64,000 nucleotides of DNA. Source: Parasitella parasitica NRRL 2501. Its lineage: Eukaryota > Fungi > Mucoromycota. Location: contig MU619360.1 of NCBI GenBank assembly GCA_025201805.1, positions 4,616-68,615 on the forward strand. Reading direction: 5' to 3'. The notes beneath the pieces are model-generated. The model made no database searches. It had not been told where the DNA came from and saw nothing but the letters and a program-made list of their open reading frames with translations. Within the stretch, counting starts at the first letter, position 1; the number at the start of each line of letters is the position of its first letter. Positions 35,754-55,925 of the stretch are shown here, one piece after another. The position numbers were made by a program, and so were the translations under genes.

Positions 35754-36817
35754 CTATCGCTTTCCTCTCTTCTTTTCAAATTTTTTACTCTTGTCACCAA
35801 ATTTCTTTTTGGCGTCAAAGTTGTTGGCATATTCTCTCTTTGACTGAAGACGAACAGCCTTTTCGGTATTTACAATGTCATTCTTTCCAACAATCTTTTT
35901 GAGAATGTCCAACGAACTGTTCTTTTCAGCTTTGATATCGCCAACAGTAGGGCTGAATTGGTGCGTAACGCCCTTCATCTTGGTTTCTCCCTTCAACTTG
36001 CTGTCAAATTTACCAACACTTGCAGTAGCCTTTTTAGAGGCTGCAATGGCAGTCTGCAGTTCCTCCTTTTTAAATTCTTTAATATCTTTTTTACCGGCCA
36101 AGGTAGCAGCAGCAGCTTCTTCTTGATTACGACGCTGACGTTTAGTGTTCTTCTCTGAGCGCCCCTTCTTCTCCTCACGTACTTTAGCATATTGATCTTC
36201 CATGGGATCCCCATGATCGGGAACGGGCAAGAGCCAATCGTGCTCCAATGTTCCTTCAGGTTTGGCTCCCTTGTAACCCCATCGAGGTGTGTATTCGCCT
36301 GTATCTTCGTCATAAACCATACGATCACGTTTCTTATTCTGAATGCCCTTAGTCTTAGCAAACTTCTCCCATCTGGTAAGAGGCTTGTCCTTGGGCAAAG
36401 GCTTTTCACGAGGCAATACACTCACACGACCAGGCAATTGTGCCAAAACACCGGCATCAGCACTGGTGACAGGCAGCTTGAAGAGCTCGTTGACAATCAA
36501 CTGAGTATTGTCTCTGGTTAGATCCAAAATGTATTTGTCTGTAGTATTCTTGCTCCTAGTCATACATGTTAATTATGCGACATTTCTGCAAGTGATTTTG
36601 ATCTTTCTTACTTGAGGGTCTTTTCATCCAAAGCGTTAGTATCGAATGCTGACAGAAGATTGATGTCAAAGTCAAGAGGTACCAGTTTTTCGACAGTAAT
36701 GGGTTTACTAACAAAGTATTCGAGATCATTTAAGTCCGCAGATTCTCGGTATAAATGTCCAATGTTTCCAACTTACAACTGAGCTTGATGAGCTTCTAAG
36801 ATCTCGGTAACATCCAT
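35754..36817 (-). CDS. RRS1: ribosome biogenesis regulatory protein Rrs1
   Basis: FDINLLSAFDTNAL; LTRDNTQLIVNELF; LPREKPLPKDKPLTRWEKFAKTKGI; PRWGYKG; TASVGKFD. Confidence 0.95.
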
Positions 36818-37683: not shown

Positions 37684-38991
37684 ATGGTCCTTCCCAAAAT
37701 CACTTTCTCTCAACTCACCGAGAAAATCAAGCAAGATCAGCTCCTTCTAAAAAATACAAGATTTATTCTCGTTCTTGATTTGGGATTCGACCCTGACGAT
37801 GTCTTTGCTGTCGATTACGCTATCAGGCATATTAAAACAAACATTGCTCTTATTGTCACTAGTTTCTACAAGACTCATGAAAAAGCGCTAGAGACATTGA
37901 TCCACTTATATTCTCAAGGAATCTACGATATTCCTGTCGCCCCTGGCATTGCTTTTGCAGACAACGATGACAAGAATGACTCCAAGTTCAAGAAAGAAGT
38001 CCCGTTGTGGCCCGCATCCTTTGGTTATGCTAGTGATTCAGAATCTCTCATCGGCAATCATTTCAAGAACTATATCAAGAATATCAAGTGTCCTCCTGAG
38101 ATCCTGGAGCGGATGACTAGATATGCTTACGACGTTTATAAGAACCCTGATTATACTACCAGCCTTGTTAGGAAAGTTTTAGCCGATGCAAAAAAGGATA
38201 ATGTGCATATTGGCGTTCTTGCTCAAGGGCCTTTGACAGATGTTTCCTCTTGGATCGATAAAGGCTACTTTAAAGATGGCCCTGACGTCTCAATTTCGTA
38301 TGTCATGAATGGGGCTTTCTTTGAAGAAGGCCAGGAGTATGTTATGGAGCGCCTTGGTTACAACTATATGATGGACCCTGATTCTGCAGCCAATTTCTTC
38401 AAGAACATGCCTGGCTATATTGTTATTATCAGCCCTGACTTTTGCCGGACGAACAATTTTGTATTGAATGAGGACGACTACGATAAGTTGATGGCTATGT
38501 TGAATTCTGGAGACATTGATGTTAAAAAAGCACTTGCTGCTGATATAGATTTGTTTTACAAAAAGAAACCTCGCTCAGTATCTTTATCACTTGCTGATTG
38601 TGGTGTGCCTTATTTTGCCCATCAGCCGGAGAAGATGGTCGATGGTGTAGCTGCTAAATTCTGTAAATCTGACGAACATCATGTCGGTCCGAACATCACT
38701 TCCGTTGCATATGTCCAAGACGAACATTTTCTCAACGCTGACCCTTACAAGTATGCTCAACTGAGTGTCGAACCAAGCAACATATTCTTTATAACTAGTG
38801 CAGAAGATATGGAGACTATGAAAGCCAGCATTATGGACACAATCATTGAATCTGTAAAAATGAGAAGACCTTTTCAGGAGATGGTTCTTCCTGGAATCAA
38901 AAAGTTGATGGAGAGAGACGGCTATAATTGGGAGTGTCCTGATTTTGAAAATCAATTGAAGCACACATCAATAGATAATTCAAGCAATTAA
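37684..38991 (+). CDS. divergent inosine/uridine-preferring nucleoside hydrolase-like protein, intronless
   Basis: N-terminal Asp cluster VLDLGFDPDDVFAV; DIPVAPG; AQGPLTDV; VMNGAF; GYNYMMDPDSA (E-x-N-x3-D-P-x-A-A-like); LSLAD. Confidence 0.65.
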   Translation: MVLPKITFSQLTEKIKQDQLLLKNTRFILVLDLGFDPDDVFAVDYAIRHIKTNIALIVTSFYKTHEKALETLIHLYSQGIYDIPVAPGIAFADNDDKNDSKFKKEVPLWPASFGYASDSESLIGNHFKNYIKNIKCPPEILERMTRYAYDVYKNPDYTTSLVRKVLADAKKDNVHIGVLAQGPLTDVSSWIDKGYFKDGPDVSISYVMNGAFFEEGQEYVMERLGYNYMMDPDSAANFFKNMPGYIVIISPDFCRTNNFVLNEDDYDKLMAMLNSGDIDVKKALAADIDLFYKKKPRSVSLSLADCGVPYFAHQPEKMVDGVAAKFCKSDEHHVGPNITSVAYVQDEHFLNADPYKYAQLSVEPSNIFFITSAEDMETMKASIMDTIIESVKMRRPFQEMVLPGIKKLMERDGYNWECPDFENQLKHTSIDNSSN

Positions 38992-39748
38992 CGCATAAAG
39001 AAAAGTAAATCAATTAATTCAGGAAGTTGTGTATTTACCTGCTTTTTGGGTTTAGAAAAACTTAAAACCAACTAAAAAGCCTTACTCAAGACATGAGTAG
39101 CTAATTAAATCTTTTCACTAAAAAATCTTTCAAAAGCTTCAATGCAATACATGCGTTGCTTGTGAATCCTTTATGTTCAAATATGGAACAAGACAAGAGT
39201 CCCAAAAGGTCATTGACTATTACTTTTCACATGAATCCATCACCGAAATCCTGTTTTGTTTTTCGAATGAAATAAACGCCCTGAATTCTCAACCATCAGT
39301 TTCTTTCCAGCTTAAGGGCATAATACTAGATTTTAAATATCTTGGGAAAATAGACATGTTCGATTCAACAAACTATTGTGTACCTTGTATTTTCGTTTAG
39401 ATGGCAAATTATGGGCGATATTGTTATACTAATATTGTGGTGATGCTCTTTTGTTTTGGTATTGTTTGGGTACAGATGCATATTAGAAGTTATACCGTAT
39501 TATGTATAATTGATGAATATTTTTGAAGAAATTGCTCACTTCACTCGCAGCAAGTGCTGAGCCAGGCAATCGAAAACAGGAAAAACCCCTCCACAAAAGA
39601 GACGAATTTCCGAGTTTTTGGGATCAAGCCATTGTGTGCAGATCAGCTATTATGTTTTTTTTTATTGTGTTTTCAATGCATGTATGCTACTTTTAAGTAT
39701 CAATTGCATTCATCATGTCAGCGATCGATGTCCCAAAACAAAAAAATC

Positions 39749-41436
39749 TCAATCCAACGAAATAGGAGATGTTACCAACTGCTCTTCTTGATCATCATTT
39801 TCAGCGTTAACAAGTGGGCTTAAAGTGTCATTTGTAAGAGTAGGTGACACCGTGTCTGGATTGCTGCCTTGGCTCGACTTGACTCGTCTTTTGGCTCCGA
39901 CATCAATACGAGAACTTGCCGAGTCCTTGAAAGATAGCTTTTCATGATATACCAGTAAGTCACCGCCACTGGGCTTATGTTTCACATTGTCCAGAGAGCC
40001 CACTTTAGAAGAGATTTCCTTGGATTTAATAAATTCATACTTGTCGTCATAAATCTTGAGATTGCCACCACCTGGCTTGTGCTTGATGTTATCCAGAGAA
40101 CCGACTTTTGAGTTGATCTCCTTGGACTTGATGAGCTCACATTTGTCGTAAATTTTAATATCGCCTCCACCTGGCTTATGCTTGATATTATCTAGTGAGC
40201 CTACTTTGGATGCAATATCTTTTGATTTGATGAAAGCGGCACGATCATCGTAGATCTGTACCAGGCCACCTCCGGGTTTATGTTTTATGTTATCTAATGA
40301 GCCGACTTTTGAAGAGGCATCCTTGAATTTAGTCAGGGCGGTTTTGTCTTTGTAAATCTTGACTTGGCCTCCTCCAGGTTTGTACTTGATATTGTCCTTG
40401 GAACCAACCCTAGATTTGATTTCCTTGGTCTTCACTAGAGGGGTTTTCTCGTCAAAGATCTGCACCAAACCTCCTCCTGGATTGTGCTTGATATTATCTT
40501 TAGAACCCACCTTTGACTTGACCTCCTTCTTGTCAAACACTGCTTTAGCGTCGTAGATCTGCACTAGGCCGCCTCCCGGTTTGTGTTTGATGTTGTCCTT
40601 GGAACCTACTTTTGATTTGACTTGCTTAAACTTGACAAACGTCAAATTGTCGTGGTAGATTTTTACTGATCCTCCTCCAGGCTTATGCTTCATATTGTCT
40701 TTTGAGCCCACCTTGGCAGTAACATTGGCAGAGATGCGTTCTTTCAAAGCGCCTAAATTTTCGTCAAACACTCGTTTGGTGCTACCAGTTGGTCTGGGCT
40801 TCACATGACTAGGTACATGAGAGTATAGTTAATTAACTCCCTTATGGCATCTCTGTGCGCGTTTGTTGTTCGTGGGACTTACACGGAATCCGGGCGAGGT
40901 GAGGTTAAAGGAGATGCAATGGAGGACCTTTTGGATGAGCCTCTGCTTGCGTCGCTTTTCAATGTGGAGGGTCTTGTAATAACTGATAATTGAGGCGTAC
41001 TTTTCGTTCCCAAGATGTGCTGTGTAGATGGAGATTCTAAATTAAACCCACCCCTCAATATATTTAATACGTTTGCATGATACGATACACTTGGTCTTTT
41101 TTTTTTCCGCCCAATCAAAATGTGTAAAATTAACGTACCTCGACTAGTTTCACTTTCACTACTATCGCTAATTTCTGGGCTGCGCTGTGGGTTTGCAGCA
41201 GCGGCTGGCTTTGACAATTGAGCAGCCTTTTTCTTGGCAATGCCGACAGTAGATCTCCTGTCACTGATTGATGCCGTGCTATGGCTACTTGCGCTTTTGT
41301 TGTCAGCCAAAGACGGGGCTGAAAGAGGCTTTTTGCCAGATGTTGAGGGTGTCAAAGGCTGAGAGCCAAGACGAATGGATGTAGCTGTCATTTTCGATTC
41401 AGTGAGTTTCCGATGACTGTTGGTGGATGTGGCCAT
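39749..41436 (-). CDS. Tau/MAP2/MAP4-like microtubule-associated protein with 8 tubulin-binding repeats
   Basis: Exons ~41436-41139, 41036-40883 and 40808-39749 join in frame. A basic Ser/Pro-rich N-terminus precedes eight SKVGSxDNIKHKPGGG-type repeats and the R'-like HEKLSFKDSASSRIDVGA. Confidence 0.88.
39890..40723 (-). repeat. eight ~99-102-bp coding repeats (Tau-type tubulin-binding repeats)
   Basis: 33-34-aa periodicity, with synonymous divergence between copies. Confidence 0.9.
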
Positions 41437-41752
41437 CTTTGTGTAAAAGGGGGAAAAAAAGAAGAAGAAAAAAGAAAGAGGGCTTTTTCACAACCAATTA
41501 AGCAAAATCAGAATTTATAAACGCACTGTACTTTTCAGACAATAGAGCAAAAAATCCAGTTGCACAAAAATTCAATAATGCTATCCTCATCCACGTGGGT
41601 GGATGCGCCTTTTCGCTGTTCTTTTTTGTTCAAAGAGTTTATTTTATGGTATGAAATTTGGGTGGGTGTTCTTCTTTTTCTTTTAAATGTGTGTGAGTGC
41701 CCATTAAATAAAATAAAAAAAAAAGGACTTTGTATCTTTCTTTTGCTCCTCT

Positions 41753-43810
<2,058 letters not shown>

Positions 43811-54482: not shown

Positions 54483-55925
54483 TTAGTATTCTTCGCCATC
54501 TTCAATTTCGGAATCACCCAAAGAATCAGAACCGACTTCCTCATAATCCTTCTCAAGGGCAGCTAAATCTTCACGAGCCTCGGAGAATTCACCTTCTTCC
54601 ATACCTTCACCGACATACCAATGGACGAAAGCACGCTTGGCATACATCAAATCGAACTTGTGGTCAAGACGAGCCCAAGCCTCAGCGATAGCAGTGGTGT
54701 TAGACAGCATACACAAAGCACGTTGAACGGTAGCAAGATCACCGCCAGGGACAGAAGCAGGGGCACGGCAATTGATACCGACCTTGAAACCAGTAGGGCA
54801 CCAATCAACAAATTGAATGGTACGCTTGGTCTTGATGGTAGAAATGGCGGCATTTGTGTCCTTGGGGACAACATCACCACGATACAACAAACAACAAGAC
54901 ATGTACTTGCCAAGGCGGGGATCACACTTGACCATTTGGTTATTAGGTTCGAAACAGGCGTTGGTGATTTCTTGAACAGAGAGTTGTTCATGGGTAGCCT
55001 TTGCCTTGGAGATGATGGGGGCATAAGTGACCAAGGGGAAATGAATACGGGGGTAAGGAACCAAGTTGGTTTGGAATTCGTTCAAATCAACGTTGAGAGA
55101 ACCATCGAAACGCAGGGAAGCGGTGATGGAGGAGACAACTTGAGCAATCAAACGGTTAAGGTTGGTATAAGAAGGACGCTCAATGTCCAAGTTGCGACGA
55201 CAGATATCGTAGATAGCTTCGTTATCAACCATGAAAGAGACATCAGAGTGTTCCAAAGTGGTATGAGTAGTCAAAATAGAGTTGTAGGGCTCAACAACAG
55301 AGGTAGCGACTTGGGGAGCAGGGTAGACAGAGAACTCGAGCTTGGACTTCTTACCGTAGTCGACAGAAAGGCGCTCCATCAAGAGGGCACCGAAACCAGA
55401 ACCGGTACCACCACCAAACGAGTGGAAGACCAAAAAACCTTGAAGACCAGTACAGTTGTCGGCCAACTTGCGGATACGGTCTAAGACAGAGTCAACGAGC
55501 TCCTTACCGACGGTATAATGACCACGAGCATAGTTGTTGGCAGCATCTTCCTTGCCAGTGATTAATTGCTCTATATTGCGGGTCAAGGAGTCAGCACATG
55601 TATGCGCATGCGAAATGCTACATTCTTATTTGTTTGTTTTAAAACAAACAAACATAAACTTACCAGGATGGAATAATTGGCGATAGGCGCCAGTGCGAAC
55701 TTCATCAACAACAGTGGGCTCCAAATCAACCATGACGGTACGAGGCACATGCTTACCAGAGCTTGTTTCACTGAAGAAGGTATCGAAAGAGTTATCGCCA
55801 GTGTTTGCCTCATCGGGAATATGGCCATCGGGTTGAATACCGTGTTCAAGACAGTAAAGTTCCCAACAGGCGTTACCAATTTGGACACCAGCTTGACCGA
55901 CGTGGATAGAAATAACTTCTCTCAT
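54483..55925 (-). CDS. alpha-tubulin
   Basis: [25 protein letters not shown]; GGGTGSG; C-terminal GEEY. One intron at ~55572-55663. Confidence 0.98.

What the first reader, a model, noticed from the sequence alone, without database searches (positions are those of the whole stretch)
39749..41436. A fungal Tau/MAP2-like protein with eight microtubule-binding repeats
Seen: a spliced gene with a basic S/P/T-rich region, eight repeats of consensus (V/I)xSKVGS(K/L)DNIKHKPGGG-x-V(Q/K)IY, and then HEKLSFKDSASSRIDVGA. Established: human Tau repeats read e.g. VQSKIGSLDNITHVPGGG and are followed by the R' segment HKLTFRENAKAKTDHGA; vertebrate Tau/MAP2/MAP4 have 3-5 repeats of 31-32 aa; the family is usually described as animal and is absent from model yeasts. 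Inference: a true Tau-family homologue that predates the animal-fungal split or was transferred, with twice the repeat number and 33-34-aa spacing. It could stabilise long microtubules in coenocytic hyphae, by analogy with axons.
Basis: partly seen in the sequence, partly recalled or inferred. Interest (0 to 1): 0.88.

Follow-up and report, generated by a model that had tools for sequence, protein, structure and literature searches.

The report
Tau-family microtubule protein in a fungus
A Mucor-like fungus expresses a real relative of the human Tau/MAP2/MAP4 microtubule-binding proteins with eight binding repeats, and the same family turns up in other early-diverging fungi, so it is older than animals; it had been noted once in passing but never studied.

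Summary
On the minus strand, 39749-41436 holds a three-exon, 503-codon gene. Its last exon carries eight Pfam PF00418 Tau/MAP repeats (E 1.2e-85) spaced 33-34 aa apart, then a Tau R'-like tail. A 1,567-nt spliced transcript contig matches with no mismatch and skips exactly the two predicted introns. The gene is single-copy, and V-ATPase B lies just upstream as in Helicostylum.

Every Tau residue that contacts tubulin in the cryo-EM model is kept in the repeats, and the alpha-tubulin pocket is intact in this genome. The chain is predicted disordered. A tubulin co-fold gave weak support only.

Named relatives occur in Mucorales, Bifiguratus, four Glomeromycotina genera, Linnemannia and three chytrid genera. 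No fungal repeat nests inside an animal group. Descent from the fungal-animal ancestor with later loss is favoured over transfer.

It is not wholly new. Sundermann et al. 2016 listed a Rhizopus delemar homologue, and UniRef auto-names several 'Microtubule-associated protein'. I found no functional study. The 34-aa period is specific to Mucorales. Eight repeats is high for vertebrates but not for the family.

The scan's earlier notes cover only this same stretch, not other DNA.

The parts
41139..41436 (-). Exon 1. ATG at 41436-41434; 99 codons plus 1 nt. Basic S/T-rich N-terminal region with the Mucorales-conserved KMT.TSIR.G motif.
   Evidence: Sequence. Transcript contig piece 41139-41447. 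Motif shared with Helicostylum, Pilobolus, Benjaminiella and Cokeromyces. pI 10.5.
41037..41138 (-). Intron 1: 102 nt, GTACGT..TAG, phase 1. It is in frame and free of stops, so it is invisible to ORF logic.
   Evidence: Skipped in the transcript contig. The same position and phase has a GT..AG candidate in Helicostylum, which the public annotation reads through.
40883..41036 (-). Exon 2: 154 nt. S/T/P-rich basic linker with 4 SP/TP sites, ending ...SPRPDS.
   Evidence: Transcript contig piece 40883-41036. 52% S+T+P, pI 11.6.
40809..40882 (-). Intron 2: 74 nt, GTAAGT..TAG, phase 2. It sits just before HVK.
   Evidence: Skipped in the transcript contig. Helicostylum has an intron at the same position and phase, RPDF(S)HVK.
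40733..40808 (-). Start of exon 3: relic of the ancestral first fungal repeat plus the linker (HVK-PRPTGSTKRVFDEN...KERI). The SKIGSLEN..K core present in orthologues is absent.
   Evidence: Alignments to Helicostylum, Pilobolus, Benjaminiella and Mycotypha show a 10-12-aa gap at the core.
39947..40732 (-). Array of eight Tau/MAP tubulin-binding repeats, 33-34 aa each, all in one exon.
   Evidence: PF00418 x8. The own-genome scan places the 8 matches at C124:44574-45347, which is window 39959-40732. Unit table. Contact residues. Purifying selection.
39893..39946 (-). R'-like pseudorepeat tail, HEKLSFKDSASSRIDVGA.
   Evidence: Aligns with the vertebrate R' and with echinoderm and mollusc tails. 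Aligned to human Tau R4-R' by phmmer.
39749..39892 (-). Acidic S/T/P-containing C-terminal tail (pI 4.2) and the TGA stop (39751-39749).
   Evidence: The transcript contig runs on to 39721.

Best explanation
This is an expressed, single-copy gene of a Mucor-like fungus. It encodes a bona fide member of the Tau/MAP2/MAP4 family of intrinsically disordered structural microtubule-associated proteins. Shown here: the gene model, the splicing and expression, the eight PF00418 repeats plus R' tail, and conservation of every repeat residue that contacts tubulin in the cryo-EM model of Tau. The matching alpha-tubulin residues, synteny and a shared intron with another Mucorales species, purifying selection on each repeat, and homologues across early-diverging fungi are also shown. 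Inferred mechanism: each repeat's S-K-V-G-S-x-D-N-I-K-H segment docks at the alpha-tubulin site at the interface between tubulin dimers. The linker then runs along the protofilament ridge to the next dimer. Eight anchors in tandem could therefore tie up to about eight consecutive dimers (roughly 64 nm) and stabilise or bundle microtubules with high avidity. The basic S/T/P-rich N-terminal flank should add electrostatic affinity for the acidic tubulin tails. Binding is probably switched off by phosphorylation of the KxGS serines (7 of 8 repeats) by a MARK/Par-1/Kin1-type kinase, which this genome encodes, and by proline-directed kinases at the SP/TP sites. The family most likely descends from the common ancestor of fungi and animals. 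Repeat number was reshaped lineage by lineage, and Mucorales lengthened the period to 34 aa.
For: Gene and RNA: (spliced contig, 0 mismatches, introns of 74 and 102 nt skipped). Family: PF00418 E 1.2e-85 with 8 stretches, and best solved matches are human Tau, including microtubule-bound 6CVN/6CVJ. Tail. Contacts: Kellogg et al. preprint 10.1101/267153 names S258, K259, I260, S262, N265, K267 and H299. The window repeats keep S262, N265 and K267 in 8/8, S258 and H268 in 7/8, K259 as K or R in 8/8, and I260 as V in 8/8. The three own alpha-tubulin genes keep Y262, I265, E420, E423, D424, E434 and V435. Disorder: AF2 with an 18-sequence alignment gave mean pLDDT 42 and pTM 0.16 with no secondary structure. 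Co-fold with Mucor alpha-tubulin and own beta-tubulin: weak support. Scores were 0.56/0.39/0.56 against a best control of 0.01. That mark was reached by 51 of 78 solved complexes and 2 of 108 mismatched pairs. At 0.60 or under it was reached by only 5 of those 78 and by all 4 passing mismatches of 180. Partner pLDDT was at least 66 and the runs agreed in at least 81% of contacts. Constraint: between units, codon positions 1+2 are 82% identical and position 3 is 36%, with dS saturated in 22 of 28 pairs. Kinase: five KA1 loci, one with a Pkinase exoN directly upstream. Vertical history: synteny with V-ATPase B and a shared intron with Helicostylum; named homologues in Mucorales, Bifiguratus, Glomeromycotina, Linnemannia, Rhizophlyctis, Powellomyces and Spizellomyces; all animal units cluster apart from fungal units.
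Against: No experiment shows microtubule binding for any fungal member. The co-fold pass is weak and may reflect the model's memory of solved Tau-tubulin complexes. The 33-34-aa period differs from the 30-32 aa of animal members, so the register along the lattice is untested. Beta-tubulin contact residues were not checked. Deep phylogeny is unresolved: on 31- and 56-column alignments fungal monophyly is neither shown nor rejected (p-AU 0.35). Intron positions do not match the animal ones in phase. Absence from Dikarya and presence in unicellular relatives of animals could not be tested with these tools. Run X1 is labelled RNA only by guess, although a spliced contig can hardly come from genomic DNA.
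Confidence: 0.85

Rival explanations
1. Horizontal transfer: an animal Tau/MAP gene or cDNA entered a fungal ancestor, and the fungal genes are not vertically inherited from the opisthokont ancestor.
For: All eight repeats lie in one exon, whereas each human repeat has its own exon (PMC8909800), which would fit a cDNA origin. The best non-fungal hits are teleost Tau at about 50% identity. The family is patchy in fungi as far as I could see.
Against: Named homologues occur in three chytrid genera, Mortierellomycotina, four Glomeromycotina genera and many Mucorales. A single transfer would therefore have to predate the split of these phyla, near the root of Fungi. Fungal units are equally distant from vertebrates (0.57), echinoderms (0.58) and molluscs (0.56), and all animal units cluster together outside them. 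The high teleost scores follow from their many repeats. Chytrid genes carry many short fungal-type introns inside the repeats. Funneliformis is as far from Mucorales (0.57) as from animals.
Confidence: 0.07
2. Tau-family by descent, but the main job in the fungus is not lattice stabilisation of cytoplasmic microtubules. It could be a spindle or nuclear-division MAP, a regulator of motor traffic, an actin or membrane linker, or a condensate scaffold.
For: Animal Tau also regulates motors and binds actin (titles and abstracts of PMC6279373 and PMC4421749, seen). The fungal protein lacks Tau's acidic N-terminal projection domain: exons 1-2 are basic. Chytrids, which lack long hyphae, also carry the family.
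Against: The residues under the strongest constraint are exactly the tubulin-contact positions, and the tubulin-side pocket is intact. Any of these roles would still start from microtubule binding.
Confidence: 0.07
3. Artefact: animal contamination of the assembly, a pseudogene, or a chance low-complexity repeat.
For: None beyond the unexpected taxon.
Against: The gene sits in a 64-kb fungal window with the same G+C as its surroundings. It lies next to V-ATPase B as in Helicostylum and has short fungal introns. It is expressed and correctly spliced, has an intact frame under purifying selection, and scores E 1.2e-85.
Confidence: 0.01

Closest known systems
Vertebrate Tau (MAPT), with MAP2 and MAP4
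   Same: PF00418 repeats with the KxGS...N..H.PGGG core. All cryo-EM tubulin-contact residues are kept. R'-type pseudorepeat follows the last repeat. A basic S/T/P-rich flank lies upstream and an acidic C-terminal end downstream. Disorder is predicted. Human Tau is the best solved match at E about 1e-33.
   Different: Eight intact repeats plus a relic, instead of 3-5. The period is 33-34 aa instead of 31-32. The aromatic I(Y/F) follows PGGG-x-x-x in every repeat, and no cysteine occupies the I260 position. There is no acidic N-terminal projection domain. All repeats sit in one exon instead of one exon each. The protein is only 503 aa and comes from a non-neuronal organism.
Invertebrate MAP2/Tau-like proteins (echinoderm, mollusc, brachiopod and nemertean entries found here; PTL-1 and Drosophila tau from my own knowledge)
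   Same: Short N-termini and variable, often larger repeat numbers (5-13). The tail motif EKL.FK(D/E)TA.PR.D.G is closer to the fungal tail than the vertebrate R' is.
   Different: The period is 30-32 aa. Many units carry KCGS. In the unit tree they cluster with vertebrate units, apart from fungal ones.
Rhizopus delemar MAP homologue listed by Sundermann, Fernandez and Morgan 2016 (BMC Genomics 17:264, PMC4815063)
   Same: A Mucorales protein with Tau-like microtubule-binding repeats, used as part of the non-vertebrate outgroup. This is the only literature mention of a fungal member that I could find.
   Different: It is mentioned in one sentence as having a 'distinct' architecture. There is no gene model check, expression, distribution in fungi or function. 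Rhizopus microsporus relatives have only 4 repeats at 37-aa spacing in 220-228 aa.
Uncharacterised fungal orthologues: Helicostylum pulchrum EDC94DRAFT_689961, Pilobolus, Benjaminiella, Cokeromyces, Mycotypha, Syncephalastrum; Glomeromycotina; Linnemannia; chytrids including Spizellomyces punctatus SPPG_00495
   Same: Helicostylum shows 66% identity over the repeats, the same upstream neighbour, and the same intron position and phase. It shares the N-terminal motif, the first-repeat start RPDF.HVK and the tail.
   Different: The window protein has the most intact repeats among the Mucorales seen (8 against 4-7), and it alone has lost the core of the first repeat. Glomeromycotina use PKGG and a 31-aa period. 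Chytrid genes are short and intron-rich.

Membership tests
Tau/MAP2/MAP4 structural MAPs (Pfam PF00418) | One or more tandem PF00418 tubulin-binding repeats above Pfam's gathering score | tested here: met
   281.4 bits against a cut-off of 27, E 1.2e-85, 8 stretches. Each unit scores 36.6-45.7 bits on its own in the genome scan.
Tau/MAP2/MAP4 structural MAPs (Pfam PF00418) | Conserved anchor residues of the repeat (Tau S258, K259, I260, S262, N265, K267, H268/H299) and the PGGG turn | tested here: met
   Residue list from the preprint 10.1101/267153. Window repeats: S262, N265 and K267 in 8/8; S258 and H268 in 7/8; K259 as K or R in 8/8; I260 as V in 8/8; PGGG in 7/8 plus one PSGG.
Tau/MAP2/MAP4 structural MAPs (Pfam PF00418) | C-terminal pseudorepeat (R') directly after the last repeat | tested here: met
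   HEKLSFKDSASSRIDVGA aligns with the vertebrate, echinoderm and mollusc tails and with human Tau R4-R'.
Tau/MAP2/MAP4 structural MAPs (Pfam PF00418) | Basic, S/T/P-rich region flanking the repeats on the N-terminal side | tested here: met
   Exon 1: 40% S+T+P, pI 10.5. Exon 2: 52% S+T+P, pI 11.6, 4 SP/TP sites.
Tau/MAP2/MAP4 structural MAPs (Pfam PF00418) | Intrinsic disorder of the free protein | tested here: met
   This is a prediction only. AF2 with an 18-sequence fungal alignment gave mean pLDDT 42.3 and pTM 0.16 with no secondary structure. A single-sequence beta-stack model (pLDDT 56) was not robust.
Tau/MAP2/MAP4 structural MAPs (Pfam PF00418) | Usual but not defining: repeat period of 30-32 aa | tested here: not met
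   The window has 33-34 aa. Animals have 30-32, Glomeromycotina 31 and chytrids mostly 30-34. Other Mucorales have 34 or 37, except Syncephalastrum with 30. The extra 2-3 residues lie in the linker, outside the conserved core.
Tau/MAP2/MAP4 structural MAPs (Pfam PF00418) | Binds along microtubule protofilaments and stabilises them | tested here: inconclusive
   The co-fold with alpha- and beta-tubulin gave weak support: score 0.56, best control 0.01. The mark was reached by 51 of 78 solved complexes and 2 of 108 mismatches. At 0.60 or under it was reached by only 5 of the 78 and by all 4 passing mismatches of 180. Partner pLDDT was at least 66 and contact agreement at least 81%. The pass may come from memory of solved Tau complexes. 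It needs an experiment.
Vertebrate MAPT/MAP2/MAP4 subfamilies specifically | One exon per repeat, and membership of the vertebrate clade | tested here: not met
   All eight repeats are in one exon, whereas human exons 9-12 encode one repeat each (PMC8909800). Fungal units fall outside the cluster of all animal units. It is a family member but not an orthologue of any one vertebrate paralogue.

The most novel reading that the evidence does not exclude
The complete Tau-type microtubule-binding module (tandem KxGS...PGGG repeats plus the R' pseudorepeat) was already present in the last common ancestor of fungi and animals. It survives in chytrids and all three subphyla of Mucoromycota and was lost on the way to Dikarya. 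Mucorales then re-tuned it, with a 34-aa period and up to nine anchors. Tractable fungi such as Mucor and Spizellomyces punctatus would then offer non-neuronal, knock-out-ready models for the ancestral function of Tau. That includes KxGS control by MARK/Kin1 kinases and the behaviour of the VQI(Y/F) aggregation-prone segments.
Probability: 0.65. Interest if true: 0.7.

Novelty: new member of a known kind. Interest (0 to 1): 0.58.

Why it matters
Tau, MAP2 and MAP4 are usually treated as animal, largely neuronal, proteins. The Tau-evolution papers I could read trace them only to a non-vertebrate metazoan ancestor and mention a fungus in a single sentence. This gene is an intact, expressed and constrained fungal member, and named relatives occur from chytrids to Mucorales. 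That moves the origin of the Tau microtubule-binding module to before the fungal-animal split. It also implies loss in the fungi that supply most cell-biology models, which would explain why it was overlooked. In practice it offers genetically tractable organisms in which to ask what a Tau-type MAP does outside neurons. It also allows tests of whether KxGS phosphoregulation is ancestral, and of how a 34-aa repeat fits the 8-nm tubulin lattice. The finding itself is a sound annotation rather than a new kind of system.

Tried and rejected
1. Intron-position homology with animals was inconclusive. Funneliformis has a phase-1 intron and Powellomyces has phase-1 and phase-2 introns near the P.GG turn, while the human boundary is phase 0 after PGGG-x (from my own knowledge). 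The rotifer Adineta has no intron in its repeats. My script found no exact exon model for Rhizophlyctis. Dreissena and Asterias genes were not on record.

2. The deep trees do not resolve. The 31-column unit tree separates animal from fungal units but has few supported forks. The 56-column last-repeat-plus-tail tree is unresolved, and fungal monophyly is not rejected at p-AU 0.35. Neither shows a clade.

3. The ESM Atlas returned only animal PF00418 clusters at 0.88-0.89, below the 0.9 level, and gave no new lead.

4. The AF2 single-sequence model suggested a beta-hairpin stack (pLDDT 56, pTM 0.61). I rejected it as a fold because the alignment-based run collapsed to pLDDT 42 and pTM 0.16.

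5. Literature searches for Tau with Mucoromycota, chytrids, choanoflagellates, PF00418 or SPPG_00495 found no study of fungal members. The Dehmelt and Halpain review is not held. Trushina et al. 2019 does not mention fungi.

6. The search of earlier findings by words returned nothing.

7. Several unnamed environmental proteins (P0003, P0121, P0219, P0256, P0293) could not be assigned to a taxon. Presence in protists therefore stays open.

8. The exons were never joined into one full-length protein for any search, fold or script. Exon 3 was used by reference, and exons 1 and 2 were analysed separately.

Full report
**What is there.** The finding lies on the minus strand. Reading 41560 to 39600 gives an ATG at 41436 and a GTACGT donor after 41139. 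An acceptor follows at 41037, a GTAAGT donor after 40883, an acceptor at 40809, and a TGA stop at 39751-39749. That makes three exons (41436-41139, 41036-40883, 40808-39752) and 503 codons. Intron 1 (102 nt) is in frame and has no stop, so ORF logic alone would miss it.

The model is confirmed by RNA. Run X1 is the only public run holding this stretch. It contains a 1,567-nt contig lying on 39721-40808, 40883-41036 and 41139-41447 with no mismatch. The contig skips exactly 74 and 102 nt, with CT..AC ends on the plus strand, which is GT..AG on the minus strand. The run is labelled RNA only by guess, but a precisely spliced contig is hard to obtain from genomic DNA. Its word depth is 185, against 2,747 for the neighbouring V-ATPase gene.

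**The repeats.** Exon 3 translates to eight units with core-to-core spacing of 34,33,34,34,34,33,34 aa, followed by HEKLSFKDSASSRIDVGA. Pfam PF00418 matches at 281 bits against a cut-off of 27, E 1.2e-85, with eight stretches. In the whole 32.8-Mb assembly of 450 contigs, PF00418 hits only this locus, so the gene is single-copy.

The units are old and constrained. Between units, codon positions 1+2 are 82% identical and position 3 only 36%. Synonymous sites are saturated in 22 of 28 pairs, and median dN is 0.21. The start of exon 3 holds the relic of a ninth, first repeat. Orthologues read RPDF-S-HVK-SKIGSLENIKHK-PSGG, whereas the window reads RPDS-V-HVK-PRPTGS. The KxGS core has been lost from the mature mRNA.

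The charge layout is as follows:
- Exons 1 and 2 are basic and S/T/P-rich (pI 10.5 and 11.6).
- The repeat array carries about +27 net charge.
- The last 52 residues are acidic (pI 4.2).

**Is it a Tau-family protein?** Yes. All 49 solved-structure matches are Tau, the best at E about 1e-33. They include microtubule-bound Tau (6CVN, 6CVJ), and repeat 8 plus the tail aligns to R4 plus R'. The tail motif EKL.F(K/R)(D/E).A..(R/K).D.G is shared by fungal, echinoderm, mollusc and vertebrate proteins. The fungal version is closer to the echinoderm and mollusc tails than the vertebrate R' is.

The cryo-EM model of microtubule-bound Tau (preprint 10.1101/267153) names these contacts:
- S258 and S262 bind alpha-tubulin E434.
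- K259 binds the acidic patch D424/E420/E423.
- I260 sits in the pocket formed by I265, V435 and Y262.
- N265 stabilises a turn within the repeat.
- K267 meets the alpha-tubulin tail.
- H299 sits in a beta-tubulin cleft.

The eight window repeats keep S262, N265 and K267 in 8/8 and S258 and H268 in 7/8. K259 is K or R in 8/8, and I260 is V in 8/8. All three alpha-tubulin genes of this genome keep [10 protein letters not shown] and [19 protein letters not shown].

AlphaFold2 with an 18-sequence fungal alignment gives mean pLDDT 42 and pTM 0.16 with no secondary structure, so the chain is predicted disordered like Tau. A single-sequence beta-stack model was not robust.

I co-folded repeats 5-6 with a Mucor alpha-tubulin, which is 98% identical to this genome's alpha-tubulin exon, and this genome's beta-tubulin exon. 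The verdict was weak support:
- Scores were 0.56, 0.39 and 0.56 against a best control of 0.01.
- The mark was reached by 51 of 78 solved complexes and 2 of 108 mismatched pairs.
- At 0.60 or under, it was reached by only 5 of those 78 and by all 4 passing mismatches of 180.
- Partner pLDDT was at least 66, and the runs agreed in at least 81% of contacts.

Tau-tubulin complexes are already solved, so this pass shows likeness rather than independent binding evidence.

Seven of the eight repeats carry KxGS. The genome has five KA1-domain loci, one with a protein-kinase exon directly upstream of the KA1-ending frame. A MARK/Par-1/Kin1-type kinase that could regulate these serines is therefore available. 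That link is an inference.

**History within fungi.** The closest relatives are 'hypothetical proteins' of Mucorales: Helicostylum pulchrum (66% identity), Pilobolus, Syncephalastrum, Benjaminiella and Cokeromyces. They share the N-terminal KMT.TSIR.G motif, the first-repeat start and the tail.

In Helicostylum the gene lies on a 1-Mb contig directly downstream of V-ATPase B on the same strand. The window has the same arrangement. The Helicostylum intron sits at the same position and phase as window intron 2.

A fungal profile search and an exhaustive HMM search found 1,367 clusters at E up to 1e-3. Name look-ups then added:
- Mucorales and allies: Mycotypha, Rhizopus microsporus and Bifiguratus.
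- Glomeromycotina: Funneliformis (two species), Cetraspora, Geosiphon and Paraglomus.
- Mortierellomycotina: Linnemannia.
- Chytrids: Rhizophlyctis (two genes), Powellomyces (two assemblies) and Spizellomyces (two species).

None of the fungal names I saw belongs to Dikarya, but that is not a systematic test.

**Ancient or transferred?** Fungal units are equally similar to vertebrate (0.57), echinoderm (0.58) and mollusc (0.56) units. Funneliformis is as far from Mucorales (0.57) as either is from animals. In a unit tree all animal units form one cluster, apart from one long-branch artefact, and no fungal unit nests inside it. Mucorales first repeats group together and last repeats group together, while the inner repeats are lineage-specific.

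A tree of the last repeat plus tail is unresolved, and fungal monophyly is not rejected (p-AU 0.35). Intron positions near the P.GG turn in chytrids and Glomeromycotina differ in phase from the human boundary, so that test is inconclusive.

Taken together, a single transfer would have to predate the split of chytrids and Mucoromycota. Vertical descent from the fungal-animal ancestor, with later loss, is the simpler reading. I put it at about 0.65-0.8.

**What is and is not unusual.**
- The 33-34-aa period is derived in Mucorales. Animals have 30-32, Glomeromycotina 31, chytrids mostly 30-34, Syncephalastrum 30 and Rhizopus 37.
- Eight repeats is the most among the Mucorales seen (4-7 elsewhere), but not for the family. 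Danio mapta has 8, Lingula 11 and Lytechinus 13.
- All repeats lie in one exon, unlike human exons 9-12 (PMC8909800).

**Prior knowledge.** Sundermann, Fernandez and Morgan 2016 (PMC4815063) included 'fungus Rhizopus delemar' among the non-vertebrate homologues and called its architecture distinct. UniRef auto-names several fungal members 'Microtubule-associated protein'. I found no paper that studies a fungal member or describes its spread in early-diverging fungi. The library lacks most subscription journals.

**Verdict.** This is a new, well-documented member of a known family. Microtubule binding is a strong inference that still needs an experiment.

Noticed in passing
window 55200-55919 (-), = G000:C124:59815-60534; locus L013: An alpha-tubulin gene lies about 14 kb from the Tau-like gene in the same window. 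It keeps the Tau-contact motifs [10 protein letters not shown] and ...EKDYEEVG. The proximity is probably coincidental.
   Followed up: partly
window 41753-42358 (-) and beyond: A V-ATPase A/B-type subunit gene (ATP-synt_ab, ATP-synt_VA_C) lies directly upstream on the same strand. The same arrangement is seen in Helicostylum pulchrum. Its transcript contig has about 15-fold higher word depth than the Tau-like one.
   Followed up: yes
L009:8001-8470 (Helicostylum pulchrum gene for P0001): The public protein model seems to read through an in-frame intron. A GTATAA...ACAG stretch of about 72 nt sits at the same position and phase as window intron 1, which RNA shows is spliced out. The true Helicostylum protein would then be about 24 aa shorter.
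   Followed up: partly
L024:3886-3962 (Geosiphon pyriformis gene for P0306): The annotated protein has an odd insert (ASKEGSLDTLPPK) inside a repeat, right at an intron. This probably comes from a mis-called acceptor. The intron would otherwise match the Funneliformis phase-1 intron after HxPK.
   Followed up: no
P0357-P0359 (Rhizopus microsporus), P0029 (Syncephalastrum racemosum): Repeat arrays were rebuilt independently within Mucorales. Rhizopus repeats the first-repeat-plus-linker unit (37-aa period, 4 copies, 220-228 aa). Syncephalastrum has two repeats separated by 55-aa serine-rich linkers, each carrying an intron, followed by a tight 30-aa array.
   Followed up: partly
window 39960-40723 (repeat array): Every repeat has an aromatic residue in the segment after PGGG: VQIY, VKIY, VQIF or LLVY. 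This corresponds to the VQIVYK/VQIINK aggregation-prone hexapeptides of human Tau. It is the subject of the scan's other note on this stretch. The aggregation behaviour of the fungal protein is untested.
   Followed up: no
window 35754-36563 (-) and 37684-38991 (+): The downstream neighbours are an RRS1 ribosome-biogenesis gene and a 435-aa protein with a weak inosine-uridine nucleoside hydrolase match (35.7 bits against a cut-off of 34.2). This downstream side is not syntenic with Helicostylum.
   Followed up: partly
P0219/P0133, P0121, P0003/P0176, P0256, P0293 (unnamed environmental proteins): Several PF00418 proteins come from unnamed marine or metagenomic sources. Some have tryptophan-rich linkers and up to 10 repeats. 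One lies on an 863-kb contig. They could be protists or unsampled animals, and their taxon would bear on the family's origin.
   Followed up: no
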